A DNA stretch of 64,000 bases from Ylistrum balloti (taxonomy: Eukaryota): positions 1-64,000 of the forward strand of contig NW_026783096.1 in assembly GCF_031769215.1 (NCBI RefSeq). The letters run 5' to 3'. The notes under the pieces are model-generated. The model was not told where the DNA came from, made no database searches, and saw only the letters and a list, made by a program, of their open reading frames with translations. Below, one piece after another: positions 2,329 through 64,000 of this stretch; the stretch's first letter is position 1, and every line of letters begins with the position of its first letter. The position numbers and the translations under genes are program-made.

Positions 2329-2792
2329 CGGAGTGTCACACTATATAGCTGTAGATACAGTACTATTAATTATCATACTTAGTACTAACACTCGGAATGT
2401 CACACTATATATCTGTAGATACAGTATTATTAATTATCATACTTAGCACTAACACTCAGTGTGTCACACTTCATATCTGTAGAAACAGTACTATCAATTA
2501 TCATACTTAGTATAACACTCGGAGTGTCACAATATATACATTAGATACAGTACTATCAATTATCATACTTAGTAATAACACTCGGAGTGTCACACTATAT
2601 ATCTATGGAAACAGTACTATTAATTATCACACTTAGTACTAACACTCGGAGTGTCACACTGTATATCTATGGAAACAGTACTATTAATTATCACACTTAG
2701 TAATAACACTAGATGGAAACAGTACTATTAATTATCATACTTAGCACTAACACTCGGTGTGTCACAATATATACTATACGTTAGATACAGTA
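2329..2792 (+). repeat. 63-64-bp minisatellite, about 7 units
   Basis: Unit resembles cggagtgtcacactatatatctgtagatacagtactattaattatcatacttagtactaacact; unit starts fall at 2329, 2393, 2457, 2520, 2583 and 2647. Confidence 0.95.
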
Positions 2793-3169
2793 CTGGCAAT
2801 CCAGCGTTTCCAAACAAGTCAATCAACACTAGCGCCATTCTCCTGTACTTTATTTGATGATTTTCCAAGTCCCTTCACCTCCTGATAAGTCACTATCAAT
2901 TGACTCTGAGTGATACCAGTGAACGACACTTTTGTTGATACCTAAACGTGTCTGCCGTTTTCACTCGATGGTTTGCTTATGCTTTTGAGTGCAATAAAAA
3001 AAATCGTGACAGCTATACTTCAAGAAATAATGATACTTTGTTAAAATTCCCGGAAAACAAACAGAAAAGTAATGAATGATCTGTAACAAAATTTCAGTTC
3101 TACAACACCTGCAATCTTACAAAAAAAACAATGATATGTTAATATAATCATAATACAAAATCAAATAAA

Positions 3170-3420
3170 ACTAGGGTAAAATATGAACAAAGAAAATATT
3201 GACACGGAGACCCTTGAAAAATAAGTATAAAAAAAAATTAACTATGTGTTCCCTAAGCGTTTTCTGCTTCATCGGCGACATCTGTCTTGTAAACCTTGGT
3301 AAATCAAAATTATTAATGTCACGTTCTTAATGGAGATCATGATATACGACAACAAAACCAAAAGCCAAATTAACGAGCATCAAACACGTCAAGCTTCATA
3401 TCGCACCAAGAACTAGAATA
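3170..3420 (-). mobile_element. 3' non-coding fragment of a Penelope-like-derived repeat (duplicate at ~47810-48060)
   Basis: The reverse complement 'ccaaggtttaca...gatgaagcagaaaacgct' matches the plus-strand copies at ~31480-31630 and ~35290-35400, which follow Penelope-like RT C-terminal coding remnants. Confidence 0.55.
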
Positions 3421-4417
3421 TTTCTCAATGCGATCACTATGGAAACCAATAATATTTATCAAATTGCATCTAATGAAACTCTGTGTAACGAGTTTGTCCG
3501 TCAATTGAAGACTTCCTGCACGGGAATCATGATTATATGATATTAAGTCAGTGACTCGTCGTACACAGATTTAGTCTTCAGAAGAATGGGCATAGTATTG
3601 ACAAACGGATATACAGCTATTACTAGTAAACTGTAACTAAATATAGCTATAAAGACGATCGGTTATAATTGTTAAATATCATGGCTTGACGTCAGTAAGA
3701 CAATGTCAATGGCATCTAGTTATACATGCAGATATATCTATCATGTCTCATTTTTAGATATGCAGCTATTTGCTATCAACGACTATCGTATACACATTTA
3801 CCCATTTAGGCCTCCAGAATCGGAATAAAGAACACGCCAAATTATACTTCATTAGCCACTAACCTCGATATTTCCCTGCTATGAGATTGCTGGCCAATAA
3901 ACCTTTTCTATTTTTCATTTATTTTAAAAGAAAACCCTGACCTTTTTATTTGCATTTCACACTTATATTTCCGTATTAACGCAACAAATCTAAATTTTAA
4001 ATCTAAACATGCAAAAGATAAAGAAACAAAAAATATACAAAAATACCGATTAGATTTATCTACTATGATACAAACAAGAAGTTTTTAATTTCTAATCACA
4101 ATGTTCTTTTTCTCACGCTTCCTACCCTCTCCGAAAGTTGACGTCATCTATGATTGTCCATGCCTTATATGATTATATTTGAAACTTCTACATTCTCTAA
4201 GTCCATTTCACTAGGTACAACTCTTCCGATGGTTGCATTCCCCGTTTTTTCGAGCAGACTTATAAGTTTTTTACGTCCTCAAGCGCTAATGATGCATTTC
4301 GATAACGCAAAATGTTAAAAGATTACTATAACACAGTCCCAATTTCTTTCTGAAAAAAATTACATCACGAATAAGTGCTGAACGAATGTACGGGTAAACT
4401 GTAGCCAAGTGTCTATT

Positions 4418-5661
4418 TTAAGATGAACTAACATATACAGCATAGACCACGTTAGCAGTCACAAGTAGCACAAAGAACGACACCAGGAATACTCGGTCCA
4501 TCAACACACCAAACTCCCTTTTCGTTACCGTAGTCAAGGTAATTGTTTCTTCATCCTTTAATTCCATCGCTCCGTCGCTCTTAACTGCATCATTGTTACA
4601 TGGAATTGAATTAATATCATCTCCAAATTTGTTCTTTCTTTTCTTGGCTTCAAAATGTTTTCGAGGGTAAGTGATTTTTGAAAGCCACATCGGGATTCGC
4701 TCTTCATTTTCTGCCAAATGGAATCTAAGTCCAATTGTAGTGAAGAAGAGAATAAGTGCACTGTATGTGACATTACAGATAAGGTACTGGGTGAAGATCG
4801 ACACTGGATTTGTGACAGGGAGTTTCTCTGATATCAACGTCATGTACACAGAAAACGAGAGAAACATGGTGACGGAGAAGGACACTCTCTCCCCGGAATG
4901 TGGGGGTAGAAGGAATACTGCTAAGTTAATGAAGCACAGGAGGACAATGGTGTCAGAAGGTTAACAATGATGAACTCCGGTTTTCGTTGAAAGATAACTC
5001 CAAAAGCGATCGTACTCGTTATGTAGGAGGTTTCATTACATGTATAGAAACCATTTACTCTCCACTGTGAGACATCTTCAATAGTAGACAGATTACTTAA
5101 ACTGACCGGAAGCAACACCAGTTCGTTTAAATAATCCGGAGATGTAAGTTTTATAGTACAGTTATGACGATCAAACGGATAGTAACTCATATCGGGTCGA
5201 CAGGATGTGCTTGTCATCACTGTATCAGATATTATATGTTGTCCTGTGTAACCACCACGAACATTGCCTTCCAAAAAAATTGTCTTCGTCTTGGTATTTC
5301 CGGATGGGTTGTTCAGAATAAGGAATGGGTTCCACACTTGACCACTTTCAAACGTCACATAAAATACTTTGGAAGTTGACATGTTCCATCGCATTATTTC
5401 ATTAGTCCATGTCGCAGTAAAAGTGGAAGTGCTCACAAGATCTCCTGATATTTCATGAAAAGCATTAATAGAATGAAAAGTCCATGTAACAGAAACATAA
5501 ATTGGGTAATACTGGTTCCAAACAGGACGGAGATGTTTGCTGTAGTTCTGAAGAAGTTGATTGTGGAATTCTCTAGCAGATTTAAATGTCAGGACAGTGA
5601 ATTCCAAACCAGATGTGATATGGCAAATGATATTCAGAAGAAATAAAGTGTTGATATCCAT
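4418..5661 (-). pseudogene. Intronless nAChR-like Cys-loop subunit, gene A copy 1, with a 1-bp frameshift at the start of M1
   Basis: Signal peptide MDINTLFLLNIICHITSG (first ATG at 5661), Cys-loop C-x13-C (CRPDMSYYPFDRHNC) and M1-M4 split over ORFs 4921-5670 and 4418-4885. The sequence reads aggacaatggtgtc here versus aggacaatcggtgtc in the intact copy, so one C is missing between 4948 and 4949. Confidence 0.9.
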
Positions 5662-6404
5662 ATCCTCCAACCGAATAGAATTCTGCTCAGCAACACGATA
5701 ACGTGTTTGAATGTCATGGGGGTGTTACTTTATAGAATATCTGAATATCTCTGTTATTGCCAGTGGATCATATCTTAATTCATATTGGCCAAAGCTATTA
5801 TGGAGAATGACAACGTGATATAGGTATATCAACAAATAATCGATCGCCCGTATTTTGTACTGTGACTATATACAATAATACGTGAATAATAAAAGCGCAT
5901 TTTGAAGCGAACTGATATATCAATAAAGAGTAGGCTATTTGTTAACATACCAATTAGGATTTATATTTCACTAATGGAGTTTTGTTGAAACTGTCCAGAA
6001 AATTGACTGACCATAGCCATTCTTCCATGTGATCTGATAAAGGTAAACTCTATATACATATAACGGTGATTCTTTAAGTGCTGGACACAATAATGATTGA
6101 TTCATAAACTTCAGTGCGTAACGATTGTGAAGCCATTCCTATCTTAATTCCACTGATGTTGTTGTATTGTTCTGTGTTCTGGGTAGTCCTTACATTCATC
6201 AATCAGAGCGTAGCTCTGGCCATTGCACCCAACGAAGTGGAATTTCCAAATGACAAGAATTTGATAATTAAAAGCAGTGTTTATTCCTTTCAATAAAAAG
6301 TAACCATATTGTCCAACAATTATTGAAAGTAGGTATATACATTTACGTATGTAATGATTTATATTAACTTTGAAAATAGATACTCTGACTGTGCTAATAG
6401 CCAG

Positions 6405-6852
6405 TTATCAAACTGTAAACGTCGTCACGGTTGTCAGCAATGATCAAACTGTAAACGTCGTCACGGTTGTCAACAGTGATCAAACTGTAAACGTCGTCAC
6501 GGTCGTCAGCAGTAATCAAACTGTAAACGTCGTCACGGTTGTCAACAGTGATCAAACTGTAAACGTCGTCACAGTTGTCAGCAGTATCAAACTGTAAACG
6601 TCGTCAAGATCTTCAACAGTGATCAAACTGTAAACGTCGTCACGGTCGTCAACAGTAATCAAACTGTAAACGTCGACACTATCTTAAACAGTGATCAAAT
6701 TGCTAAAGTTGTCACGATCTTCAGCAGTGATCAAACTGTTAAAGTTGTCACGGTAGTCAACAGTTATAAAACTGTAAACGTCGTCACGGTTGTCAGCAGT
6801 AATCAAAATGTTAACGTCGTCACGATCTCCAAAAGTGATCAAACTGTAAACA
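6405..6852 (+). repeat. 36-bp minisatellite, about 12 units (duplicate at ~51026-51473)
   Basis: Unit resembles atcaaactgtaaacgtcgtcacggttgtcagcagtg with period 36 (6411, 6447, ...). One 35-bp unit is present in both copies. Confidence 0.95.
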
Positions 6853-7924
6853 TTTTTTGGTATTTATCCACCCCATTATAGCAATTCAGTAAGTTTTCCA
6901 AATAAGAGATGCTGTGCCATTTACCTCCATTTAATTTCATATTTTCCAGATTGCTACTGAGTTTGACAGTTATCCGGCTCATCTTTTTGCCGGAAATCTT
7001 ACATTACGTTGTTTTTGTTTGGTTTTGTTTTTTTGTTTTTTGTTTTTTTTTTTGTTTGTTTGTTTTTCGTTTTGTTTTTCGTTTTGTTTTTTTTATTCAT
7101 TAAATAAGTTGTTGTTTAAGTGCATGTGAATTTTCAGTCATCACCTCTCAAGCTTAGGACATAAAGACCAAGAATATGTCGCATGTAATAAATTTCAAAA
7201 TACAAAGTTGTTAAGATTTGTTTCTGTCGGATACCGCGATATGATAATCCAGCCAACCTAGAGCCGTCAAATATACTGTATAAGAAGCCACTCGGTAGTT
7301 TAAAATTCACCTGGTTAGCCCTTTGAAAGGACAAAATGAAACCTAAGCCAAAGATTTAAGCTGGTGAGAAAAGATTTATTTAATGTGTATTTTGACGAAA
7401 AAGGCTTGACACATTTACTCAATTGTCATGCAAATATCCCCCCTGATATAGTTAGCATTCTAACAGCAAGTAAGGCCGGGCTGTAAAGCTTCCTAACCAG
7501 GATTATGCAGTCACGATGTTTCAAAAATGACATAGAACAAATTTAGTATATGAACTAGTAGCTAGTTTAATTAGGAACTGTCAATTACAGAGTTGTGTGC
7601 TCCTTATTCCGTCTTTTCGTAATGGAGGTTATCTGCTTGTGTGACCAGGTGTTAATTGTTACTTCATTCATTCATGTTATTTTCTCGCGTAGACTAATAC
7701 AGAAACAACAAATACACACTCCCAAGAGCAGATAACTCTTTATTACGAAAAACTCTTAATGATAGTACTTGAATTAACACTGGAACTTTATTGCATTCTG
7801 TCCGAATGCTATAAGGTCGATGTTAATGCCTCTTTTCTTTACCCATGATACGTAAATATTACTTAAGTTTGCATTTAACTCGACATTATTTAGGTTTTAC
7901 GTTTATCTCCTTGCATGCTGGAAA

Positions 7925-8062
7925 GGTGTGTATCTTCAAGCATAGTAAAAAGGTGTGTATCTCTATGCATGGCATAAAGGTGTGTATCTTCAAGCAAGGT
8001 AGAAATGTGTTTATTCTCAAGCAATGTAGAAATGTATCTATCGTCAAGCAAGGTAGAAATGC
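7925..8062 (+). repeat. 27-bp tandem repeat, about 5 degenerate units (duplicate at ~52543-52680)
   Basis: Unit resembles ggtgtgtatcttcaagcaaggtagaaa. Confidence 0.85.
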
Positions 8063-8736
8063 GGAAAAGTGTGTTGAGAATGAGAAATATCCTGTTTGGA
8101 AACCATAGACAAATTGTAGATATAGTACGTAGAGTATTTACGTAACATAATAAATACCTAATAGTGATCGCTGAGTATGGGCTACTAAGTGAAGTGTAGT
8201 GAAAGCTCTGGTAAAGTTCGAGGTGAAATAGTATAATAGAAATGCCTTATTAAATCATGTGTATGAAACTAACCCAGAACAACAATAAATATTTCAATTT
8301 CTACCCAAATCAGACTCAATGAAACTACTTCAACATTTAATAACCGTAACTTTACGTTTCAAAAAATGTGAAGCGACTGATGCCTGATATTTCTTGTTCT
8401 CCGCTTCGGTGCCTGTAAAACAATGGCCGACATCGCTTCGTTTGCGAGCCGGCGCACCACGTCTAGACGTTATTATTTCGCAAAAAAATGCATACTGTCT
8501 TTGTTGCACAGTATTATCTAAATTTTCATTAAAGTTGTCGAAAAAATATATTAAATAATGTTCTTATTTAAGTTTCATTGAATATGAAGTAACCACGCTG
8601 AAATATATTTCAACCTGTCACAATAATCTGTCTTCAAATGACGGACTATTTGCTTGTATCACGTCAAACGATATGATGACAAGAAACGAAACGAAAGTTT
8701 CCATGCTATAGCAAAAGAGATGCGTGAATTGAAATA

Positions 8737-8895
8737 TAAGGGTTGAATCTTGCTTGTGTCGATTTCATGGGATGATGAATTGAATTGGTCTTGAGATAAA
8801 TTTAATGAACTGCAAAGCAGTTCATGTTGAATTTGTCTCAAGACCAACTCAATTCATCATCCCATTAAATCGACATAAACAAGATTCAATCCTTA
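8737..8895. repeat. Long inverted repeat / hairpin with ~78-bp arms and a 3-nt loop
   Basis: taagggttgaatcttg...atgaactgc-aaa-gcagttcat...caagattcaatcctta; the arms are reverse-complementary with a few mismatches. Confidence 0.9.
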
Positions 8896-9124
8896 AATGA
8901 ACAACAGAATGTTGTGATATCGTGGTAATGTAAGCAGGTAGTGTTTAAGACATTTTTTTTATCAGAAGAAGTGACATATTGGAGATGAATAGCAGTACCA
9001 GGTTAACCGTAGTGAAGTGTCTTGATAAGATGGTGTAATATACACAGCATTGAATGTATTCATCGTATTTGTATTGGATGAACAGCAATACCAGGCTAAC
9101 CGTTGTTAAATGTATTTTGGAAAT

Positions 9125-10060
9125 GATGTGACATAATAAGCACAGCTTACAATTGCAGTCATCAGAAGTACAAGGAAGGACAATAGCAACACTCTGTCCA
9201 TCGGCCCACCTTACTCACTTTGCGTTACCGTAGTTAATGGATCTGTCCTCAACCTTAAAATCAAACCTTAAAATCACCCGATTTCTGCTGTTTCATTGAT
9301 AAACGATTTTTGTGAATTCCACATAGGGATTCGCTCTTCATTCTCTGCCATATGAAATTTCTGTCTAACTATAATAGAGAAGACAATAAATGCATTATAC
9401 ACAACATAACAGATGAGGTCCTGGGTAAAGATTGACACTGGATTTGTGACAGGGAGTTTCTCTAATATCAACGTCATGTATACAGAAAACGAGAGAAACA
9501 ACCTATATTTATAAATATTGACACGCGCTTCCCAGAGCAAGACAATCGGTGTCGAAGGCTCGTTATGATGACCTCATTGAAAGATCATTCTAAAGGCAGG
9601 TTATCACTGTAAAAGGAACAAGCTAGTATTTTCATTAGCAGCACCTCGAACTTTACCGTCCAAAACTCTATCTTCATTGTGGTATTTCTGATTGCGTTGT
9701 TTAGCGTAAGCAATTGATTTCACACTTGTTCAGTCAAACGTCACATAAAAGACTTTGTTAGCGAACACATTGCAGCGCATAAACTGATCAATCTATGTAA
9801 TAGTAAAATATGATGGGGTTGCCATATTTCCATATATGTTCTGAAAGCATTAATGAAAAAAACGTTTCATTCAATAGATACGAAAATTGGGTTAGTTTGA
9901 TATCTATTTGGACGGAGAAGATTGCTATAGTTCTGAAGAAGATGATTATAAAAATTGACATCAGATGATTCAAACGTCAAATTACTGAATTTCCGAAAGT
10001 GTTTGATATGGCAAATGACATTCTAAAGACAAAAAGAATGATGACAAAATACTCAGGTAG
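9125..10060 (-). pseudogene. Decayed nAChR-like paralog of gene A
   Basis: The minus strand retains FYNHLLQNYSNLLRP...IFVSIE* (Trp to stop), FLSFSVYMTLILEKLPVTNPVSIFTQDLIC, FHMAENEERIPMW and an M4 remnant. It has several deletions and frameshifts. Boundaries are approximate. Confidence 0.9.
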
Positions 10061-10329
10061 ATGGAAATGCTGCTTATCATTACGATAATGTGTTTGTCAG
10101 TATTGTTAGTCGGCAAGGAGAGTTCATTATCTGTATGATGAACACAAAATGGTAAAGATCACAAATATAAGTGATTATTCTGCCATTTAGATTAATAAAG
10201 TTGAGGATCCTTGACAACTGTTTTATCACCAATGTATGCACAATAACTTTCAGGTATGACCGCACAACTTTCAAGAAATGTGCGGCAAGGCCGTAAAATT
10301 TGTTACAAGAAGACGTCACGTGACAGCTT

Positions 10330-11317
10330 CAGAGACTGCCCGAGCAATTAGAATACTGTATGCAGGACAATCATAACTGTCTGTAGCTGCACACTTCAAT
10401 GTGGTCACAGTGTCATTTCTTGATCATGAAATCGCTTTCAGATGACCAGAAACGTCACCGATAGAACTCGAATGGAATAGGAAAGCCCTTCAGGATCGTT
10501 ATCTAATTACGTATTATCAGAAATCGGTTTTGCAAGTTCCTAAAGGTTGAATAGCGACTTTTGTCAAGCAACAGGAAGAAGACCTTCTGAAGAAACACTG
10601 AGGAATAGATTTCACCGTTCTGGATTACGTGTTCACAGACCCGTGGTATGACTCACACATACCATAGCTTGGAAGCATTGGGCAGCTGCCTTTGTGAATT
10701 GGCGGCTACGTCAACGACACCTATCATTTTAAAGGATGAGTCCAGATTTCAACATGACAGGAGGCGTGTTTGGCGTGGGTTTGAGTTAGAGGTATGTTGA
10801 CTGATGCGTCACTGAACATGACCGTTTCGGTTGGGGCTTGGTAATGTTTAGAGGGGGTTTTTATTGTCGGACTGACTTGTACGTGACTGGAGGCTCACAG
10901 GTTTACGATACCGGAATGAAGTACTTCATTCAATGGTAAGAGCCTTTGCGCATGGTGTCGGCCCTGAGATTGTGCTGATGGACGACAGTTCTAGACCACA
11001 TAGAGATTCACTTTTGAAAAAGTACCTTCAAGTACCTAGTCTTTCACCCAACCTTAACCTGATCGAGCATGCATGGGGCATGTTAAGCAACCAACTGGAA
11101 CATTTTGAATTTTCAGCGCCATCGAGATTTTATATTTGTTTTAGAAGGATTTGAACATTTTATGTAATCATACGATTCAATGCAATGTATTCAAAGTGGG
11201 GAAAAACCGTTTTCTTTTTGCTTGACTTCATTCTTATATTGCTTATTCCAAAAGATTTTGCCTTTCGATACAAATAAATTAACCTTTAAAAAGAGCCTCC
11301 AAACTTTTTGTGCCCAG
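10330..11317 (+). mobile_element. Tc1-family DNA transposon relic (duplicate at ~54950-55950)
   Basis: Motifs QDRYL, DESRF, MDDSSRPHR and SPNLNLIEHAWGML (DDE remnants, with the D-E spacing shortened by deletion). A terminal-like 'aaactttttgtgcccag' is followed by TA. No left TIR was found. Confidence 0.85.
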
Positions 11318-11618
11318 TACATGGTCAATGGTTCAGATTAAGCGCTGATTGGCACAATTGAAGCAGCTGAGAAAATTCCGTTTATGTTCGTTAATAGACA
11401 GACATACTAATACTGGTAACCTCGTTTATGACATCCGACAATGAACCATCACTGTCTGTGTACAGGAAATACACCAAATAAAGTAGACAATGTCTTTTCA
11501 ACGATCTATTACATCAAATGCATTTTGGTTAAATGTTTACATATAATTTAGGGTTAATATTTCACTAATGGAAATGGGGTTATATTTGAATCCTGTCCGG
11601 AAACAGCACAACAAATAC

Positions 11619-11657
11619 CATTCATTCATACATTCATTCATTCATTCATTCATTCAT
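11619..11657 (+). repeat. (TTCA)n microsatellite (longer in copy 2, ~56252-56303)
   Basis: Direct reading. Confidence 0.9.
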
Positions 11658-12849
11658 AAATCCTTATAGAAGTAAACTATATTGTACATATTATGATTCG
11701 TTAAGTGCTGAACATAATACTGATTGATTTGTGAACCTCAAATGTGTTTCCTGTCTCTGATATGTATAATCAGTGACATTGTAAGTATCGCCATTACACT
11801 AATGTTGTCGCTTTGATATAAATCTATACAGGATGGCGAGTTATTGATTACATCTTATTACTAACATATTGGATATTTCAATATAATTATACATTTCCTT
11901 TTCATCCTAGTCTGTAAAACACCTTCATTACATTGCCAAGGTTATATTCGATATCGCTACCTCTCATTCATATATTTATAGTAAGTAATGCAAAATGGGA
12001 TGTGAAAAAATATTGCCTTATTCGGGGCCACATATATCAGATAAACCATTTACAGATATCCCATCTTGGCGACCTGTGTTTACGAATACATCACGGACTT
12101 TCCCTACTGCATTATCCCATACCTCAACCTTGCTTAAAAGGATTTGAAATGGAACTGTCGATGTTACCTACTTCATGTTTAAGACGTGACTTGTATCGAA
12201 ACGCTATACAACTTTTGCTTACGTACCCTGTGCTTGAGGAACGAAAGTGTTAACACATTGTCATTGTGCTTACTTAACCGTCGTCTAGGATCCATGATTT
12301 CTTCCTTTAAATTTCAGTAAGGATCACACAATCTTCATCTATATTTTACTGTTGAACTTCCTAATATGCTATCAGATAAGATATGCATTAACATACACAT
12401 ATATACTCTGAAACAACACAATGACGTGGTCTACTTGAAAACTTCAGTTTAGAAACACGCAAATTAAGATACTGAAATATAATGAGAATTTGGCCGTTTT
12501 CTGTTACTGAAAGAGTCTGTGAGACACCTGGCGCACAATAGCAAAGAGTGATTCCATGGTCCAATTTTCAAAAAATGCACTGGTTTGAACTTATTTGCCT
12601 AGTTTGGGCTTCAATGTCGTTCTTTTTTAACATCTCAAACAAAACATGAGACACTTTATACTGATTTAGAATGAAATCTAATTTAAACCGTCATATATGG
12701 AATCATTAAATTATCAACACGTGCGTAAATCGTTTGTCCTGACACCAATTAAAGTTTATCGTGCCTCCGCCGAACACACAATGCTATGTTCATAACGAGC
12801 ACATCTTATTAAAAGTTCACTAATTAGAAAGTTTACAAACACACTGCAG

Positions 12850-14625
12850 TCATTTGCGTATGATTTCTACCGGCATTAAACAATCATTAATCCATTTTAC
12901 ATCCGACACCCACCTGTCCATTAGATTACACTGGCTTGTTATATAGTTTTCATGCGCTTCATACTCAGATTGTAGCTTTAAGGATATACGTGAACAAATA
13001 TAACAGTAAACTACGTTAATCAGATCTGACACAAGCCATAAAAAGTCACGAAGCAATGCTCTTAAATGTAAAAGTTGAATTTGCATATAAGGGAATGAAT
13101 GCTTTTAACAGCAGCGCTATTTTACATCAGAAGTCTGTTTTAGCTAACATTTCTCCATACTTTCAGCAGAAATACCCCTGTGATTTCCTACAGTAACCCC
13201 AAACCATTTACATCCAAACTTTTCAACTACAAATGAATGCTGCAAGAACTGAATGTAGATGACCTAAGAAGTACTCCTTTGTCAGCTCGGTCGTATTCTA
13301 CTTCTACTTATAACTATGGTCCTACTAGGCACAAAGTATCTGGTGAATAAAGCTTAATTCAAACTGTTCAGCTACGACAGCTTAAGTATCGCAAAGCCCT
13401 GCCCGTTGATTGGAATAGATTTTCAAGATACTCATGGTTTCCGTTCAAAATATGCCAAAGATTGGGCGAAACGAGATTCACTTTCTGGGTGGGTTAAATC
13501 CATTTTGAAAAGGCTCAGCTGCTTGAAATCTAAAATAGAAACAAAACACTTGTCAGCTTTCCTCGATTCTGATGTTAAACCCATATTTCAAGATTTACAT
13601 GACAAGTACGTTATTGTGACTGTTGTTTAGGGGTCCAATAACTTGATCCTTGTCTGCAAACATTATTTCATTTCCTGCATACAAAAAAGAACAAGGATTG
13701 TTTGATAACGGAGGATATCTCGTCTATACAGTATGCTATTTTTCCAAAGAAAAAATACTTGTTCAGCATACTTTGGTACTAAAATTATTTAGATTACCTA
13801 TTAATGATAAGATGATAAGGATAAGGACCTCTCCCGTATAATTGGATTCCTACATTTCACAAGAATCTATATAAACGACGTTTTAATGCTGGCTCGTCTA
13901 GCTCCTCAACCAAACCTTTGTCAATACTAAGAACTCGACAAGGCTTTTGACCGATCTTCAAAACTCTTTTGTAAAACATACTCTTATACAAAAACATTTG
14001 ATGTTTCCACTCTGCACACCACCATACCAATGCTAAGAAAACTGGAAGAATGCCTTCGTTCTCTTCTTAAGAGCTTTCTTTTTTAGACAGATAACTATAC
14101 TGAAGTGCATTTCCTGCAAAACAATATATCTAAATAGGACGAAATAAGAAAAATGATCTTATTAAAACAAGTCACAAAGGCCATATAAAGTTTTTAAATA
14201 ACTATTTCGGATATATTGGCATAGTTCAGATAACAAGAAATATATTGACGCAATTAATCGTATAAACCCCAACAGAAATAGAATTCAAGGAAAAGAACAG
14301 CTCTACTACATCAGCCGCTTATCTCGTTCTTTTCCGACAATCAAACCAGTATGAACAACTTTCCAATAAGTTGTATAAGTGTGATCATTTTACTTTCCCT
14401 ATTGTGAATTTTCCTTCTCTGGAGTGCAACACACCTTCATCCTCATCCTATCGTGTTAACATATCGCAGTAGATTCGATATTCAAGAGTCTGTTCTAATT
14501 ATCACGTTATCCATCCATGAAATCTTCAATTGCCGGACAAAATCCTAAATCTTTCTTTTGTTCAAATTTTGCCCTAGATCTATTGAATTTGGATTATAAT
14601 TATGTGTTGATATTTTTCCGTTTTC
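12850..14625 (+). mobile_element. Degraded Penelope-like retroelement RT (duplicate at ~57480-59370)
   Basis: Frame-broken motifs LHDKYV..(P.DK)GSNNLILVCKH, WIPTFHKNLYKRRFNAGSSSSSTKPLS, KTFDVSTLHTTIP and FPIVNFP..ISQ*IRYSR match Penelope-like RT as recalled. Boundaries are approximate. Confidence 0.8.
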
Positions 14626-15183
14626 TTTCTTTTGTCTTTTCTGGGTTTTTTTTTTTTATTATTATTATTATTTAACTCAGTGATAAGATTAATTTAACAA
14701 CGACACCCACAAAAAAATCTGTAACTTTAAATGAAATACTGTTTAACAATCATTTTCTGGCTGCCTGGATGTCAGATAAAGTAAAGATAGTATAAAATTT
14801 ACATTGACGACTTCTTTGTTTTTAATCAGACTATGTAAATACAATCCCGTGTCGATACCCATGTTAACACGGGGTAATCGAATCGTTAACTGCTTATTGA
14901 TTTGCTCAAGAATAACAATAACAGTTGATGTCAATAATGGAACGGAATAACCCAACAACATTAACGATATTTCCTTATAGATATAGTTTGTTGAATGGCA
15001 TTATTGATATTTGTTCTGCGTGGTAGAGCTTAAAAGCGCCCTCTTTATCATTTACAAAAAAATTGTCAAAAATCAAATACACTGTATGTGCACATAATCC
15101 GTTATTTTGAAGTTATCCATCGAGTGAGTAATAGAGACGTGTCAGCAATGGTGACAAACAACAACGAACGTAGGCATCACACT

Positions 15184-16485
15184 ATGAATGCGTGGACCTT
15201 TCTGTTCATATTTGCCTGTTTTATGTGCTTTCATGTAAATTGTGACGAGAAAAAGAGTCATGTTGTTGACATCTCCTATGAATCTGTTACCGAGTTACAG
15301 CATTTATTGCTACAAAACTACAGCAAAGATTTTCGCCCCATACATAATCAAGGAAGACAAGTAGTGATATCTGTTTTCTGGGAACTACACAGCATAAATG
15401 CCTTCAATGAGGTCACAGGAGAGTTCGTAACAAGCTCCAGATTTACAACTGCGTGGGTCAATGAAATGATGAAATGGGATCAATCTTTATACAATACATC
15501 TTACATCATTCTTAACAGTGCAAATATATGGATTCCGGTACTTGCTTTCGATAACCCGACTGGAAGTACTGATATCAGGAAGGAATACGAACACGGAACC
15601 ATTCGTTGTACTCCTAAAGGCAACCATTTCTTTGCGGTAGCGATAAGGACGAGCACAATTTGTCAACCTGACATGCGTTTATATCCGTTTGATCGCCATA
15701 ATTGCACCATAATAATTTATACACCTGATTATCTAATTCATGAGATTGCCTTAATACCATTCATTCTGACCGATGTTTCTAAATTAATAGTGGTTTCCCA
15801 ATGGGAGGCTACTAATTTCTACAGCTATAATGACGATACAAGAGATTACAGCCGGCTGGTATTCGGAATTGAGTTCAAAAGAAAACCGGAATTTGTTATC
15901 TTTAATCTACTGGCACCAGTTGTCCTCCTGTGCTTGCTCAATATAACAGTATTCCTTCTACCCCCACAGTCCGGGGAGAGAGTGTCCTTCTCCGTCACCA
16001 TGTTTCTCTCGTTTTCTGTGTACATGACGTTGATATCAGAGAAACTCCCTGTCACAAATCCAGTGTCGATCTTCACCCGGTACCTTATCTGTAATGTCAC
16101 CTACAGTGCACTTATTCTCTTCTTCACTGTAATTGGACTTAGATTCCATTTGGCGGAAGACGAAAATGAGATTCTTTACGGTTGCCTTCAGCGATTAATC
16201 AAAGCCGTATATCTCATTTTTTTCCTTTGTGGAAGACGAAGAAGACAAAAAGAAGATGACCACCAGGTGGCACTCGACAACAAATCTGCTGATACTGTAA
16301 GTACCACCGATTCGCTTCCTCCCGTGTTACCCGAAAATCACAGAGATTTGAATAAAGACAAAAACGTAGGAGATATTCTTATGAAAGACTTCGGCAGACT
16401 GATTGACAAATTTTGTTTAGTGTTCTTTCTAATGATGATTGTAGCAGGGAATTTAACGTTTGTGTTATATATCGCACTATCTTGA
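15184..16485 (+). CDS. Intronless nAChR-like Cys-loop subunit, gene B copy 1 (433 aa from ATG 15184; alternative in-frame ATG at 15148)
   Basis: Intact ORF with signal peptide MNAWTFLFIFACFMCFHVNC, Cys-loop CQPDMRLYPFDRHNC, M2 GERVSFSVTMFLSFSVYMTLISE, and M4 before TGA. No vicinal CC (non-alpha type). Confidence 0.95.
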   Translation: MNAWTFLFIFACFMCFHVNCDEKKSHVVDISYESVTELQHLLLQNYSKDFRPIHNQGRQVVISVFWELHSINAFNEVTGEFVTSSRFTTAWVNEMMKWDQSLYNTSYIILNSANIWIPVLAFDNPTGSTDIRKEYEHGTIRCTPKGNHFFAVAIRTSTICQPDMRLYPFDRHNCTIIIYTPDYLIHEIALIPFILTDVSKLIVVSQWEATNFYSYNDDTRDYSRLVFGIEFKRKPEFVIFNLLAPVVLLCLLNITVFLLPPQSGERVSFSVTMFLSFSVYMTLISEKLPVTNPVSIFTRYLICNVTYSALILFFTVIGLRFHLAEDENEILYGCLQRLIKAVYLIFFLCGRRRRQKEDDHQVALDNKSADTVSTTDSLPPVLPENHRDLNKDKNVGDILMKDFGRLIDKFCLVFFLMMIVAGNLTFVLYIALS

Positions 16486-19400
16486 TACTTGTTAAATGTT
16501 TGTATTGATTTACATACGCTTTAATTTATGTTATATGTATCCTGACTTTATCCTCCTTTCTCTTTACGTCATTAAAGCCCCAATATACGAAAAAATCACT
16601 ATAAAAAAACAAACTTTATCTTATTTTCCCCGTAATATATGTATCAAAACAAATACTTTCCATGAATTAAGAAAATAAAACTGACTGTTTTCAATTTAAC
16701 TATGTGGGACCCACAATAATTCATACATTACCGCTCGTAGCGATGACATTGCACATGCGCATATTCCGCGTGTGTAAACATGGCAGACACAGTACAGACG
16801 TTCACCAGTCGCTTCCTTTTTTTCCAATCATACATCAGGCCAGTTCTGAATTTTTACATTATAATTGTACGTCGTATCGTTTCTAAACTAATTATTCCTT
16901 CTAATAATTTCCCAAAAACTGAATGTTTATCACAGGAATACTTCAAGTCTACGACAAGACTTCGCAAACATGCGTCCTCTACAAGTAGAAACCTCAACTC
17001 TCGCGAGATCAGGTCATGAACTTTCCGACGTGGTTCGGCAACAATCGTAATTTCGATGGAGGCTGTTTAAAATGGAGGTGTGTTTACAAATAGCGAGTTT
17101 CAACTGCTCATATATCAATACTTTATGCACAAAGTCATGGTAACTATTGTTTGAATAACTTAATTCTAACTATATCTTAGAGAATATATCAATAATTATG
17201 TGTGATTCTACATTAAATTTTTGGTGAATGTTACGTATATTGGGGCTTTAAAAATAACATGCCCGTAACTGTGATTGAAAATAAAACTTTATCTGTAAGA
17301 CTCAATATGTAAAGCATGAGTCTCGTTATTGTACTTGACAAATATATCATTATTCGTACAGGTAAATGTATCGAAAGTCACAAGTTTCAACATTTACCTA
17401 TGTGACACTTCAAATTCTCTCTGTATAACATATGATATAATGATGTGTGTAGCATGACTTTATAGACAAAGTGTTGAGGAAAACTTTGTGTACATCCATT
17501 TTCTATATGTCCATAAAAATAGCTTTCCCATTGCTGTGATTGAAATAAAACTGTGTTTGAGATTGACTCAATTTACAGTATACAACATTGTAACGGGAAG
17601 ACTTGTTTTGCTTAATTTAGATAACATATCACTGTCAACTGTTTTTAGTATACATGTATTTATTTACAATGATATAAAATGGTCTTAAGTCACTTAACAC
17701 CAGAATCTCTCACTCTTTCACTCCATTGATAGAACACAATAAAATAATAATAACATTTGTAAAGATGGGATGTGGTCCACACTTTCTATACAACAGTCTA
17801 ACAACAAACACTAATGTCTCCAAATCACAAGTAGGCAGTAATCCACAATGGTGCACACTGACGGTCAAATGTCCACACACCTACTAGCAGGCTGAATTCC
17901 ACTTTCAGTGTACTGAGTCCCTAACTACTATAGCTACTCAAGGTACTCCACAACCTTAACCCTCCCTGGCCGAGGACGAATCCTACGTCAACAGACTCGA
18001 GGACTGGACGATCATACCAAATAACCATCCCCAGTTGGAGGACTGCATGGACCCTGGTATACATCACCGGTCAATAGCATTGGCCACAGGTCCGTAACAC
18101 TACGGAAACGTCAATATGAGACCACATCGGCACCAACAATATCGAGTCAAACTACAATATAATTGACATACACTAATCACAAACGTATGGCCTATTATTC
18201 TCAATACATTGCAGTAAACATCTTACAAGAACATGTCATTACTAGCAACGCTACAGCAACATCCGTTTTGCGTGTAATACTATAAGCCACAATAGATGTA
18301 ACCACTGTATGCAACTCATTATACCTATTCATAATTATTCCAGCTTATAAACAGTAATTACTTGACTACTGTTAGGTTTGTTATAGTGTTAAATATTATG
18401 CAATATCACTACTTGAACATAAAAATGTACAGCCACCACCTTACTAGCTAACAATAACAAACACACACCTGTTAACACGTGTATACACCTGTACAGTACA
18501 GTAGCGACTCTATATAAACAGAACTAGTAATGACATTGTTTACGTCTGTTTACCGCACATAAAATAGTTAAAGTTACTCATGAATTCAACAAAACATGCA
18601 TAAACCTCTAACGGGTAAGGCACTCTACGAAAGCTGCGGTTTTCGTTGATGTTATTCCCGTATTTACGTTTGTTAACCGGCCATGGTTACCACGCACCTG
18701 CTAGTGTTCCCTATTCTCATGTCCTCTCCTCGTTTTCCAGTTCATATCCGGTACAAAATTTTCTACCGTGCGCACGTAATTCAAAGTTCATATGCATGTG
18801 ATATGTGACAATAGTTAGGTCAGTGATAAGTAAGCCTTCAATAAGGAAGAGTAGAATTCAGGTAATGGCGTGAAAGAAAAACCTGAGAAATGACTATAGG
18901 GGGCAACTGCATATTGACCTCTCCTCCCCAAAGTTAACAACAAGGAAACAAATATATATTCACCTGGTGGAGAAGATGTGCAAAAAAAATGTTCGCATTA
19001 TTCAATCGGGTACTTCATTAGATGTCCATTCGACTTCAGACAGACACGTGGTTGTAGTGAACCAATTATGTTTTGAAATATAAATATAAATAGAGAGGCT
19101 TTCGAAAATAACTCAATGAAATATGTAATTGGATACATGTATGTATATGGATGAGGTGGTGGGTGTAAGAATGTGTTCGTGTGTGTGTGGAAGATTGTGA
19201 GTGTGGTGGCGTATGTGTGGTTAGAAATAAAAAATTGTTTTCACATTCTCTTATTTAAGATATTGAAAAAGGTGCACAAACGATGAAGTCTTCTAAACAT
19301 TAGCGCTTTCAGTATAAAGTTTCACATGCTCAACCATTAGGACACATTTACAAAGTACACGGTGGCAAGGATACTATATTTTGACGACACATATACATTC

Positions 19401-47069: not shown

Positions 47070-47432
47070 TAACACTCGGAATGTTGCGTCATATATATGT
47101 AGATACAGTACTATTAATTATCATACTTAGTACTAACACTCGGAATGTGACACTACATATCTGTAGAAACAGTAATATTAATTATCATACTAAGTACTAA
47201 CACTCGGAGTATCACACTACATATTTATAGATACAGTACTATTAATTATCATACTTAGAACTAACACTCAGTGTGTCACACTATATACGTTAGATACAGT
47301 ACTATTAATTGTCATACATAGTACTAACACTCGGAGTGTCACACTACATATCTGTAGATACAGTACTATTAATTATCATACTTAGAACTAACACTCAGTG
47401 TGTCACACTCTATACGTTAGATACAGTACTGG
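47070..47432 (+). repeat. 64-bp minisatellite, copy 2 (about 5-6 units)
   Basis: Same unit as 2329-2792. Confidence 0.92.
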
Positions 47433-61251: not shown

Positions 61252-64000
61252 TACTTGTTAAATGTTTGTATTGATTTACATACGCTTTAATTTATGTTAT
61301 ATGTATCCTGACTTTATCCTCCTTTCTCTTTACGTCATTAAAGCCCCAATATACGAAAAAATCACTATAAAAAAACAAACTTTATCTTATTTTCCCCGTA
61401 ATATATGTATCAAAACAAATACTTTCCATGAATTAAGAAAATAAAACTGACTGTTTTCAATTTAACTATGTGGGACCCACAATAATTCATACATTACCGC
61501 TCGTAGCGATGACATTGCACATGCGCATATTCCGCGTGTGTAAACATGGCAGACACAGTACAGACGTTCACCAGTCGCTTCCTTTTTTTCCAATCATACA
61601 TCAGGCCAGTTCTGAATTTTTACATTATAATTGTACGTCGTATCGTTTCTAAACTAATTATTCCTTCTAATAATTTCCCAAAAACTGAATGTTTATCACA
61701 GGAATACTTCAAGTCTACGACAAGACTTCGCAAACATGCGTCCTCTACAAGTAGAAACCTCAACTCTCGCGAGATCAGGTCATGAACTTTCCGACGTGGT
61801 TCGGCAACAATCGTAATTTCGATGGAGGCTGTTTAAAATGGAGGTGTGTTTACAAATAGCGAGTTTCAACTGCTCATATATCAATACTTTATGCACAAAG
61901 TCATGGTAACTATTGTTTGAATAACTTAATTCTAACTATATCTTAGAGAATATATCAATAATTATGTGTGATTCTACATTAAATTTTTGGTGAATGTTAC
62001 GTATATTGGGGCTTTAAAAATAACATGCCCGTAACTGTGATTGAAAATAAAACTTTATCTGTAAGACTCAATATGTAAAGCATGAGTCTCGTTATTGTAC
62101 TTGACAAATATATCATTATTCGTACAGGTAAATGTATCGAAAGTCACAAGTTTCAACATTTACCTATGTGACACTTCAAATTCTCTCTGTATAACATATG
62201 ATATAATGATGTGTGTAGCATGACTTTATAGACAAAGTGTTGAGGAAAACTTTGTGTACATCCATTTTCTATATGTCCATAAAAATAGCTTTCCCATTGC
62301 TGTGATTGAAATAAAACTGTGTTTGAGATTGACTCAATTTACAGTATACAACATTGTAACGGGAAGACTTGTTTTGCTTAATTTAGATAACATATCACTG
62401 TCAACTGTTTTTAGTATACATGTATTTATTTACAATGATATAAAATGGTCTTAAGTCACTTAACACCAGAATCTCTCACTCTTTCACTCCATTGATAGAA
62501 CACAATAAAATAATAATAACATTTGTAAAGATGGGATGTGGTCCACACTTTCTATACAACAGTCTAACAACAAACACTAATGTCTCCAAATCACAAGTAG
62601 GCAGTAATCCACAATGGTGCACACTGACGGTCAAATGTCCACACACCTACTAGCAGGCTGAATTCCACTTTCAGTGTACTGAGTCCCTAACTACTATAGC
62701 TACTCAAGGTACTCCACAACCTTAACCCTCCCTGGCCGAGGACGAATCCTACGTCAACAGACTCGAGGACTGGACGATCATACCAAATAACCATCCCCAG
62801 TTGGAGGACTGCATGGACCCTGGTATACATCACCGGTCAATAGCATTGGCCACAGGTCCGTAACACTACGGAAACGTCAATATGAGACCACATCGGCACC
62901 AACAATATCGAGTCAAACTACAATATAATTGACATACACTAATCACAAACGTATGGCCTATTATTCTCAATACATTGCAGTAAACATCTTACAAGAACAT
63001 GTCATTACTAGCAACGCTACAGCAACATCCGTTTTGCGTGTAATACTATAAGCCACAATAGATGTAACCACTGTATGCAACTCATTATACCTATTCATAA
63101 TTATTCCAGCTTATAAACAGTAATTACTTGACTACTGTTAGGTTTGTTATAGTGTTAAATATTATGCAATATCACTACTTGAACATAAAAATGTACAGCC
63201 ACCACCTTACTAGCTAACAATAACAAACACACACCTGTTAACACGTGTATACACCTGTACAGTACAGTAGCGACTCTATATAAACAGAACTAGTAATGAC
63301 ATTGTTTACGTCTGTTTACCGCACATAAAATAGTTAAAGTTACTCATGAATTCAACAAAACATGCATAAACCTCTAACGGGTAAGGCACTCTACGAAAGC
63401 TGCGGTTTTCGTTGATGTTATTCCCGTATTTACGTTTGTTAACCGGCCATGGTTACCACGCACCTGCTAGTGTTCCCTATTCTCATGTCCTCTCCTCGTT
63501 TTCCAGTTCATATCCGGTACAAAATTTTCTACCGTGCGCACGTAATTCAAAGTTCATATGCATGTGATATGTGACAATAGTTAGGTCAGTGATAAGTAAG
63601 CCTTCAATAAGGAAGAGTAGAATTCAGGTAATGGCGTGAAAGAAAAACCTGAGAAATGACTATAGGGGGCAACTGCATATTGACCTCTCCTCCCCAAAGT
63701 TAACAACAAGGAAACAAATATATATTCACCTGGTGGAGAAGATGTGCAAAAAAAATGTTCGCATTATTCAATCGGGTACTTCATTAGATGTCCATTCGAC
63801 TTCAGACAGACACGTGGTTGTAGTGAACCAATTATGTTTTGAAATATAAATATAAATAGAGAGGCTTTCGAAAATAACTCAATGAAATATGTAATTGGAT
63901 ACATGTATGTATATGGATGAGGTGGTGGGTGTAAGAATGTGTTCGTGTGTGTGTGGAAGATTGTGAGTGTGGTGGCGTATGTGTGGTTAGAAATAAAAAA

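What the first reader, a model, noticed from the sequence alone, without database searches (positions are those of the whole stretch)
4418..16485. Cluster of intronless nAChR-like channels with a dismantled acetylcholine site: candidate chemosensory receptor family
Seen in sequence: genes A and B are single-exon CDSs with a signal peptide, C-x13-C Cys-loop and four TM helices. Aligned by eye to vertebrate alpha7 (recalled from memory), the ACh aromatic box is largely gone. Loop A Tyr is N in A (WNPFLILNNP) and D in B (WIPVLAFDNP). Loop B Trp is P (TSPDY, YTPDY), and loop D Trp is T in A and R in B. Loop C has no vicinal CC and is about 6 residues shorter. The pore keeps cation-channel hallmarks: -1' Glu in GER, 9' Leu and 13' Val. 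Established knowledge: cephalopod chemotactile receptors are tandemly arrayed nAChR-derived channels that lack canonical ACh-binding residues, and bivalves have large nAChR expansions with many intronless members. Inference: these are cation channels gated by non-ACh, possibly environmental, ligands, evolving by birth and death (intact, frameshifted and decayed copies lie side by side).
Basis: partly seen in the sequence, partly recalled or inferred. Interest (0 to 1): 0.85.

Follow-up and report, generated by a model that had tools for sequence, protein, structure and literature searches.

The report
Scallop orphan nicotinic-like channel gene pair
Two intronless scallop genes for nicotinic-receptor-like cation channel subunits that lack the acetylcholine pocket are really there, but about a hundred genes in this genome look the same, the expansion is already published, and a smell or taste role remains untested.

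Summary
Genes A and B are single-exon Cys-loop channel genes (Pfam LBD plus TM domains, C-x13-C, four helices, GER/9'Leu/13'Val pore). Tool alignments to human alpha7 and to CC-bearing alpha9/10-like proteins confirm loss of loop A Tyr, loop B Trp (to Pro), loop D Trp and the vicinal Cys pair.

Copy A in the stated range is broken by a 1-nt deletion near 4948. An intact twin lies at 49038-50282, because the window holds two copies of one duplicated unit (A, dead copy, B).

These features are not special. Of 61 sampled intronless paralogues in the same genome (at least 97 exist), none has the CC pair or loop A Tyr, and all keep the cation pore.

A and B are an old scallop-specific pair with relatives in Pecten and Argopecten, under purifying selection. 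Their pocket loops are no more variable than the rest of the domain. They are no closer to cephalopod chemotactile receptors than to alpha7.

No RNA data exist, so a sensory role is untested.

This is a new member of the published bivalve nAChR expansion (Jiao 2019). This scan already reported at least five similar arrays elsewhere in this genome.

The parts
4418..5661 (-). Gene A, copy 1: A-type intronless nAChR-like subunit, reading frame broken as assembled
   Evidence: It forms two ORFs. It differs from the intact A' by one 1-nt deletion plus 4 substitutions. tblastn identity to A' is 99.4-99.6%.
4947..4949 (-). Site of the 1-nt deletion (codon 238, M1) that breaks copy 1 of A
   Evidence: locate it. 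In four independent DNA contig runs both intact forms (extra T after 4947, extra C after 4948) are present, and no contig positively supports the deleted form.
9124..10022 (-). Decayed A-like pseudogene (stops, internal deletion of the Cys-loop-to-M1 part)
   Evidence: tblastn pieces at 33-50% identity with in-frame stops.
15148..16485 (+). Gene B, copy 1: intact B-type intronless nAChR-like subunit (445 aa from ATG 15148, 433 aa from ATG 15184)
   Evidence: AlphaFold model has mean pLDDT 77 and a pLGIC fold, with Z 28.1 to alpha7.
49038..50282 (-). Gene A', copy 2: intact A-type subunit, 414 aa
   Evidence: Best solved relative is human alpha7, E 9e-32.
53794..54668 (-). Decayed pseudogene, copy 2
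   Evidence: tblastn with stops.
59914..61251 (+). Gene B', copy 2: intact, 98% identical to B
   Evidence: Against B, dS is 0.025 and dN 0.011.
2473..19234 (.). First copy of the duplicated segment (A, pseudogene, B)
   Evidence: Self-blastn shows 96-98% identity to 47093..64000, with an offset of about 44.6 kb.
47093..64000 (.). Second copy of the duplicated segment. It runs to the window end. The closest further copy is at the end of contig C619.
   Evidence: C619:490304-502619 matches window 61342-49034 at 98.2%.
4709..4991 (-). M1-M3 tract of A that is 91% identical in DNA to B (gene-conversion tract); the twin tract in A' is 49329-49612
   Evidence: Third-codon-position identity between A and B is 0.93-1.00 here, against 0.3-0.4 elsewhere and 0.47-0.60 between species. 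dS is 0.19 here and saturated elsewhere.
15874..16158 (+). Matching M1-M3 conversion tract in B (60640-60924 in B')

Best explanation
A and B are two anciently diverged subunit types of a scallop-specific branch of the published bivalve intronless 'nAChR' expansion. Each encodes a complete pentameric ligand-gated channel subunit: signal peptide, ligand-binding domain with Cys-loop, four TM helices and a cation-type pore.

Shown. The canonical ACh site cannot form on either face, because loop A Tyr, loop B Trp, loop D Trp and the CC pair are missing. Both the ligand-binding domain and especially the pore are under purifying selection across scallop genera. The genes sit head-to-head as an A, dead copy, B unit inside a recently duplicated segment of about 44.6 kb. 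A gene-conversion tract keeps M1-M3 of A and B nearly identical.

Inferred mechanism. They assemble, alone or together, into cation channels opened by something other than ACh at a remodelled, more acidic pocket (Asp or Asn at the loop A Tyr site, Pro at the loop B Trp site, NDD in loop C of B). This pocket is conserved between scallop genera. That suits a stable ligand, endogenous or a constant cue, better than a fast-changing environmental repertoire. I put about 0.45 on 'non-ACh-gated channel'. About 0.2 goes to 'silent accessory subunit of ACh-gated heteromers'. About 0.15 of the total goes to a peripheral chemosensory role.
For: Identity. Pfam LBD and TM domains match. The family profile hits alpha7 at E 3e-37. 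The fold matches alpha7 at Z 28.1.

Site loss. Shown by alignments.

Pore. GER, 9'L, 13'V and 20'E are present.

Place in the expansion. At least 97 single-ORF paralogues exist in the genome, from 203 candidates. In the ML tree, A with Argopecten P0004 and B with Pecten P0002/P0003 form a 100%-supported clade. That clade is nested among own-genome and oyster paralogues, apart from the CC-bearing alpha9/10-like proteins.

Constraint. Between Ylistrum B and Pecten P0002, LBD pN is 0.21 against pS 0.72, and M1-M3 pN is 0.11 against pS 0.55. Among A copies dN/dS is 0-0.19; among B copies it is 0.4-0.5.

Gene conversion..

Birth and death in three genera..

Literature. Jiao 2019 (PMC6896357) reports 99-217 nAChR genes in bivalves, many intronless and tandem, and only 13 of 132 C. 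gigas genes with a fully conserved principal site.
Against: No expression evidence at all: no RNA run holds the genes. No functional data exist for any member of this branch. The comparable lophotrochozoan orphan Alpo4 has resisted ligand screening (PMC10338036), so 'ligand-gated' is an assumption. dS between genera is saturated, so omega values are rough. The duplicate units may partly be uncollapsed haplotypes rather than true paralogues.
Confidence: 0.8

Rival explanations
1. A and B are peripheral ionotropic chemoreceptors for environmental ligands, a bivalve counterpart of cephalopod chemotactile receptors.
For: They share the CR hallmarks: intronless, arrayed, ACh residues lost, cation pore kept. 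Birth-and-death dynamics are present. The LBD has higher omega (about 0.5) than M1-M3 (0.08-0.44) among recent paralogues. A 2026 preprint reports a 'CR-like' clade that includes bivalves (PMC13174522).
Against: The same hallmarks hold for all 61 sampled paralogues, so they do not single out this pair. The pocket loops of B are conserved between Ylistrum and Pecten, and loops are no more variable than non-loop LBD columns (Fisher p 0.26-1.0). Omega is below 1 everywhere. There is no special sequence or structural affinity to CRs: by profile alpha7 scores 132 bits against CRT1 at 112, and by structure alpha7 gives Z 28.1 against CRT1/CRB1 at 22.9. No tissue data exist. Oyster paralogues are reported in early development, immune and stress responses (PMC6896357).
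Confidence: 0.15
2. A and B are ligand-blind accessory or structural subunits. They co-assemble with canonical alpha subunits in ACh-gated heteromers, as vertebrate beta1, beta3 or alpha5 do.
For: Both binding faces are defective while the pore and the Cys-loop coupling elements are very conserved. The genome also holds about 20 exon-type matches closer to a canonical CC-bearing loop B-C region than any intronless copy, so canonical partners probably exist.
Against: About a hundred accessory subunits would be an odd economy. The LBD loops are conserved between genera, which suggests a used pocket. Co-assembly was not tested here.
Confidence: 0.2
3. The genes are non-functional relics (retro-pseudogenes) with open frames kept by chance or youth.
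For: One copy is frameshifted as assembled and a decayed copy lies beside it. There is no expression evidence.
Against: A-type and B-type each stay intact in different scallop genera despite saturated synonymous divergence. M2-M3 is 90-100% identical in protein while third positions are about 50% identical. A' and the C619 copy differ by 5 synonymous and 0 non-synonymous changes.
Confidence: 0.04
4. The within-window duplication, and the extra copies on C619 and C1015, are assembly artefacts (uncollapsed haplotypes). On this view each haploid genome has only one A and one B.
For: The window contig is only 67 kb. Copies lie at contig ends (C619 end, C1015 start). Identities are 96-98%, within the range of bivalve heterozygosity. 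Variants specific to copy 1 (for example at 4595) are not seen in four other individuals.
Against: Both units lie on one contig 44.6 kb apart. Two distinct intact forms (CCAATT and CCGATT) occur together in all four independent individuals, which fits fixed paralogues better than alleles. A further B copy at 87% protein identity lies 2 kb from another on C619.
Confidence: 0.25

Closest known systems
Bivalve/lophotrochozoan intronless nAChR expansion (Jiao et al. 2019, PMC6896357)
   Same: The genes are single-exon and tandemly arrayed, and arise by lineage-specific duplication. The LBD is diverse and mostly lacks the principal ACh site, while the cation pore is kept. A/B nest among own-genome and oyster paralogues in the tree.
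   Different: This is a Pectinidae-specific two-type (A/B) branch on a long stem. Loop B Trp is replaced by Pro (39 of 61 paralogues keep Trp). There is an intergenic gene-conversion tract over M1-M3 and a recent segmental duplication of about 44.6 kb.
Cephalopod chemotactile receptors CRT1/CRB1 (PDB 8eis, 9e6b, 8eiz)
   Same: They are nAChR-derived, intronless, arrayed cation channels without the ACh residues. Fold match is Z 22.9, with 22-26% identity.
   Different: They are no closer than alpha7 or 5-HT3A by sequence profile or structure. No signal of diversifying selection in the pocket loops was found. No sensory-tissue expression or hydrophobic ligand is known. The resemblance is best read as parallel evolution.
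Human alpha7 nAChR (for example PDB 9viq, 8ut1)
   Same: It is the best solved relative: profile E 3e-37, Z 28.1. It shares the Cys-loop, the M2 pattern (-1'E, 9'L, 13'V, 20'E), and both loop C tyrosines in A.
   Different: Identity is about 20%. Tyr93, Trp149, Trp55 and Cys190-191 are not conserved. Loop C is 8 residues shorter. The gene is intronless.
Alpo4, orphan nAChR-like receptor of Alvinella pompejana (PDB 8bx5; PMC10338036)
   Same: It is a lophotrochozoan nAChR-like subunit without the CC tip, unresponsive to ACh, with an unknown ligand. Fold match is Z 23.7.
   Different: Alpo4 keeps the aromatic cage (F103, W159, Y199, Y205, W65). A and B have lost three of the five positions.

Membership tests
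Cys-loop pentameric ligand-gated ion channels, cationic (nAChR/5-HT3) branch | Neur_chan_LBD plus Neur_chan_memb domains in one chain | tested here: met
   Pfam PF02931 E about 1e-24 and PF02932 E 1e-9 to 1e-12 for B, A' and B'.
Cys-loop pentameric ligand-gated ion channels, cationic (nAChR/5-HT3) branch | Cys-loop C-x13-C and four TM helices in a pLGIC fold | tested here: met
   The Cys-loops are CQPDMRLYPFDRHNC and CRPDMSYYPFDRHNC. The AF2 model shows M1-M4 helices. Z is 28.1 to alpha7 and 26.0 to 5-HT3A.
Cys-loop pentameric ligand-gated ion channels, cationic (nAChR/5-HT3) branch | Cation-selectivity signature in M2 (-1' Glu, no PAR motif), 9' Leu gate | tested here: met
   The M2 sequence is GERVSFSVTMFLSFSVYMTLISEK, aligned to alpha7 M2. 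Glu and Leu are invariant in all 61 paralogues. Actual selectivity was not measured.
ACh-binding nAChR alpha subunit | Vicinal Cys-Cys at the tip of loop C | tested here: not met
   Absent in A, B and all 61 paralogues. Present in the controls P0017 and P0019.
ACh-binding nAChR alpha subunit | Principal-face aromatics: loop A Tyr93, loop B Trp149, loop C Tyr188 and Tyr195 | tested here: not met
   Tyr93 is N (A) or D (B), and Trp149 is P in both. The loop C tyrosines are retained in A and at least one in B.
ACh-binding nAChR complementary subunit | Loop D Trp55/57 | tested here: not met
   T in A and R in B. The B copy on C619 has T.
ACh-binding nAChR | Currents gated by ACh or nicotine | not testable with these tools
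   Needs heterologous expression.
Bivalve intronless nAChR expansion (Jiao 2019) | Single-exon CDS, tandem or clustered copies, lineage-specific duplication | tested here: met
   Uninterrupted ORFs occur here and in Pecten and Argopecten. Clusters include dead copies. At least 97 single-ORF loci exist in the genome.
Bivalve intronless nAChR expansion (Jiao 2019) | Phylogenetic nesting among bivalve paralogues | tested here: met
   The A/B clade (100% support) lies inside a 25-row group (97% support) with own-genome and Saccostrea sequences. It is a quick ML tree and long branches were flagged.
Cephalopod chemotactile receptors | Membership of the CR clade | tested here: inconclusive
   No CR sequence could be brought into a tree (reached no cephalopod). 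By proxy, profile bits are alpha7 132, 5-HT3A 124 and CRT1 112, and structural Z is alpha7 28.1 against CRs 22.9. This shows no special affinity.
Cephalopod chemotactile receptors | Diversifying selection on pocket residues | tested here: not met
   Loop columns are no more variable than other LBD columns, and omega is below 1. The test is weak, with only nine sequences.
Cephalopod chemotactile receptors | Expression in a peripheral sensory epithelium; activation by poorly soluble or hydrophobic ligands | not testable with these tools
   No RNA runs were found for this organism. Ligand tests need electrophysiology.

The most novel reading that the evidence does not exclude
The scallop A/B pair is an obligate heteromeric, non-cholinergic sensor. 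Its remodelled acidic pocket (Asp/Asn for loop A Tyr, Pro for loop B Trp, NDD in loop C) would detect a cationic or environmental cue in mantle or tentacle sensory cells. That would be an independent, bivalve instance of the neurotransmitter-receptor-to-chemoreceptor transition known from cephalopod CRs. On this reading gene conversion keeps the two subunits' pores matched.
Probability: 0.1. Interest if true: 0.7.

Novelty: new member of a known kind. Interest (0 to 1): 0.25.

Why it matters
If deorphanised, members of this expansion would show what bivalves do with about a hundred ACh-blind nicotinic-type channels. That question has been open since 2019. This locus offers a compact test case: two conserved subunit types with orthologues in other scallops.

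As it stands the finding adds no new kind of system. The site loss is the norm of the whole expansion. The literature already proposes non-ACh ligands, and a 2026 preprint already raises an ionotropic chemosensory role for divergent molluscan nAChR clades.

Tried and rejected
- RNA evidence. Two run searches found only DNA-type contig runs, with no RNA. Expression could not be tested.
- Tree with cephalopod CRs. The word-indexed protein searches, by single sequence and by profile, returned only 19 and 26 relatives and no cephalopod. PDB chains cannot be imported. CR affinity was therefore judged only by profile scores and structural Z.
- Full family census. The residue tally rests on 61 paralogues. 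For the same reason the exon-type canonical candidates could not be fetched to confirm a CC pair.
- Pocket-loop variability enrichment gave no signal.
- ESM Atlas look-up returned only generic Neur_chan clusters.
- Complex prediction for A+B was not run. Any two pLGIC extracellular domains would be expected to dock, so a pass would not separate heteromer from homomer.
- The idea that the M2-M3 identity of A and B reflects only protein constraint is rejected. Third codon positions are 93-100% identical between A and B but only about 50% between species, so it is gene conversion on top of constraint.
- The idea that the frameshift shows an established pseudogene is not supported. Four other individuals show only intact forms. 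It may be private to the assembled animal or a consensus error.
Full report
WHAT IS THERE

The stated range holds three copies of one gene family.
- B is an uninterrupted frame at 15148/15184..16485 (+).
- A lies at 4418..5661 (-) and is split into two ORFs.
- A decayed A-like copy with stops and an internal deletion lies at 9124..10022 (-).

A differs from an intact twin by a single-base deletion at about 4948 and four substitutions. The deletion is in codon 238, in M1: intact copies read CCGATT or CCAATT and this copy reads CCATT.

The twin exists because the window carries two copies of one segment. Positions 2473..19234 match 47093..64000 at 96-98% identity, about 44.6 kb apart. The second unit has an intact A' (49038..50282, 414 aa), a second dead copy (53794..54668) and B' (59914..61251, 98% identical to B).

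More copies of the unit sit at the end of contig C619 (98.2% identity, plus an extra B copy at 87% protein identity) and at the start of C1015.

The organism is inferred to be the scallop Ylistrum balloti. A protein named for that species sits on a contig of 128,142 bases, which is the length of C1015. The window's own protein sits on a contig of 67,395 bases, which is the length of C1239.

CHECK OF THE RESIDUE CLAIMS

Pfam finds Neur_chan_LBD and Neur_chan_memb in A', B and B'.

- Loop A Tyr is N (A) or D (B).
- Loop B Trp is P.
- Loop D Trp is T (A) or R (B).
- There is no vicinal CC.
- Loop C is 6-8 residues shorter.
- The Cys-loop is C-x13-C.
- M2 has -1' Glu, 9' Leu, 13' Val and 20' Glu.

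One nuance: A keeps both loop C tyrosines in the alpha7 alignment.

An AlphaFold model of B (mean pLDDT 77) has the pLGIC fold with four TM helices. Its best structural matches are alpha7 (Z 28.1), muscle and alpha4beta2 subunits, and 5-HT3A (Z 26).

HOW SPECIAL IS IT?

Not very. The genome holds at least 97 single-ORF nAChR-like loci, from 203 candidates. I extracted 61 of them and tabulated the same positions.
- 0 of 61 have the CC pair.
- 0 of 61 have loop A Tyr.
- 3 of 61 have loop D Trp.
- 39 of 61 keep loop B Trp.
- All 61 keep -1' Glu and 9' Leu.
- The median loop C length equals that of A and B.

So the 'dismantled acetylcholine site' is the ground state of the whole intronless expansion. 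The only local peculiarity is Pro at the loop B Trp position.

The literature already covers this ground.
- Jiao et al. 2019 (PMC6896357) describe 99-217 nAChR genes in bivalves, mostly intronless and tandem. Only 13 of 132 oyster genes keep the full principal site, and the authors suggest diverse ligands.
- A 2026 preprint (PMC13174522) reports divergent molluscan clades with substituted agonist residues, a 'CR-like' clade that includes bivalves, and a possible ionotropic chemosensory role.
- The Alpo4 paper (PMC10338036) makes the same argument for an annelid orphan receptor.

This scan has itself reported at least five similar arrays elsewhere in this genome. Its follow-ups reached the same verdict.

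EVOLUTIONARY ANATOMY

In a quick ML tree, A groups with an Argopecten protein and B groups with two Pecten maximus proteins. Together they form a 100%-supported, long-stemmed clade. That clade nests among own-genome and oyster paralogues, away from the CC-bearing controls. So A-type and B-type split before these scallop genera diverged.

The Pecten and Argopecten genes are also single-exon. They sit in loci with further intact, frameshifted and fragmentary copies, which confirms birth and death.

Selection is purifying.
- Between Ylistrum B and Pecten P0002, LBD pN is 0.21 against pS 0.72.
- For M1-M3, pN is 0.11 against pS 0.55.
- A' and the C619 copy differ by 5 synonymous and 0 non-synonymous changes.
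- Recent B paralogues have omega 0.4-0.5, with the excess in the LBD.

Columns of binding loops A-F are no more variable than other LBD columns. B's loop motifs are conserved between genera: WxPVLAxDNPTG, YxPDY and YNDDT..YSR.

A stretch of about 285 bp covering M1-M3 is 91% identical in DNA between A and B. Third codon positions there are 93-100% identical between A and B but only about 50% identical between species. This is gene conversion on top of strong protein constraint.

THE FRAMESHIFT

I laid four independent DNA contig runs from two studies on 4100..10050. Both intact forms appear in all four runs: an extra T after 4947 and an extra C after 4948. No contig positively supports the deleted form, and the copy-1 allele at 4595 is absent from all four. 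The break may be private to the assembled animal or a consensus error.

Both intact forms co-occur in every individual. That fits two or more real paralogous copies better than alleles. Contig data cannot settle copy number.

RELATION TO CEPHALOPOD CRs

I could not bring CR sequences into a tree. Proxies show no special affinity.
- B alone scores Torpedo beta 98 bits, 5-HT3A 94, CRB1 90, alpha7 86 and CRT1 84.5.
- For A' alone, alpha7 scores 114 bits and the CRs are not among the 60 best matches shown, the weakest of which scores 75 bits.
- The family profile scores alpha7 132, 5-HT3A 124 and CRT1 112 bits.
- Structural Z is 28.1 for alpha7 and 22.9 for CRT1 and CRB1.

The resemblance is functional-architectural, most likely parallel, and not clade membership.

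FUNCTION

No RNA run exists for these genes, so the tissue is unknown.

I commit to the following. These are functional orphan cation-channel subunits, with identity confidence about 0.8. They are most likely gated by a non-ACh ligand at a conserved, more acidic pocket (about 0.45). The rival roles are silent accessory subunits of ACh-gated heteromers (about 0.2) and environmental chemoreceptors (about 0.15). Decay to pseudogenes is largely excluded by the selection pattern.

The genome also has about 20 exon-type matches closer to a canonical loop B-C region. Canonical cholinergic subunits therefore probably exist elsewhere. I could not fetch them to confirm the CC pair.

VERDICT

The sensory half is untested and receives no specific support here. 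This is a new member of a known, published kind, and interest is low to moderate.

Noticed in passing
window 2473-19234 and 47093-64000; also G000:C619:490304-503366 and C1015:1-7550: A segmental duplication of about 44.6 kb period carries the A / pseudogene / B unit. Further copies at 94-98% identity lie at the ends of two other contigs, so the array is probably longer than assembled or partly haplotypic.
   Followed up: partly
window 4709-4991 vs 15874-16158 (and 49329-49612 vs 60640-60924): A gene-conversion tract lies between the otherwise about 45%-identical genes A and B and covers M1-M3. Third codon positions are 93-100% identical there. Long antisense ORFs overlap it (4671-4964 +, 49291-49611 +) and look spurious.
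   Followed up: yes
window 36992-38649 (+): Two adjacent ORFs have weak RNase H-like (PF17917, E 1.6e-4) and tyrosine-recombinase (PF00589, E 4e-5) matches. Both are below Pfam cut-offs. This is probably a DIRS/Crypton-type mobile element remnant.
   Followed up: partly
window 42155-42544 (-): An ORF matches the start of the sodium:solute symporter family (PF00474, E 1.7e-9). It is probably the first exon of an SLC5-type transporter gene lying between the two receptor units.
   Followed up: partly
window 6402-6851 and 51023-51472; 2328-2794 and 47070-47430: Minisatellites of about 36-bp and about 64-bp period lie beside gene A in both units. The 36-bp one gives a spurious 96-aa repetitive ORF at 51173-51463.
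   Followed up: no
window 8279-9074: This stretch has contig depth of about 500-2000 in four DNA runs, against about 20-50 (up to about 170 in one bin) in most of the rest of the laid stretch. It is a high-copy interspersed repeat inserted between A and the dead copy.
   Followed up: no
L038 (Pecten maximus LR736851.1:22670562-22691839): The Pecten B-type orthologue is flanked by a GFO/IDH/MocA oxidoreductase gene and an ionotropic glutamate receptor-type gene (Lig_chan). An A-like fragment lies 3.5 kb upstream of it. The second Pecten B-type gene lies about 156 kb away on the same chromosome.
   Followed up: partly
G000: C122, C240, C53, C190, C79, C179 and others: About 20 exon-sized open frames (170-230 aa) match a CC-bearing alpha10-like loop B-C region at 30-38% identity, better than any intronless copy does. 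They are probably the intron-containing canonical nAChR genes of this scallop. I could not fetch them to check.
   Followed up: no
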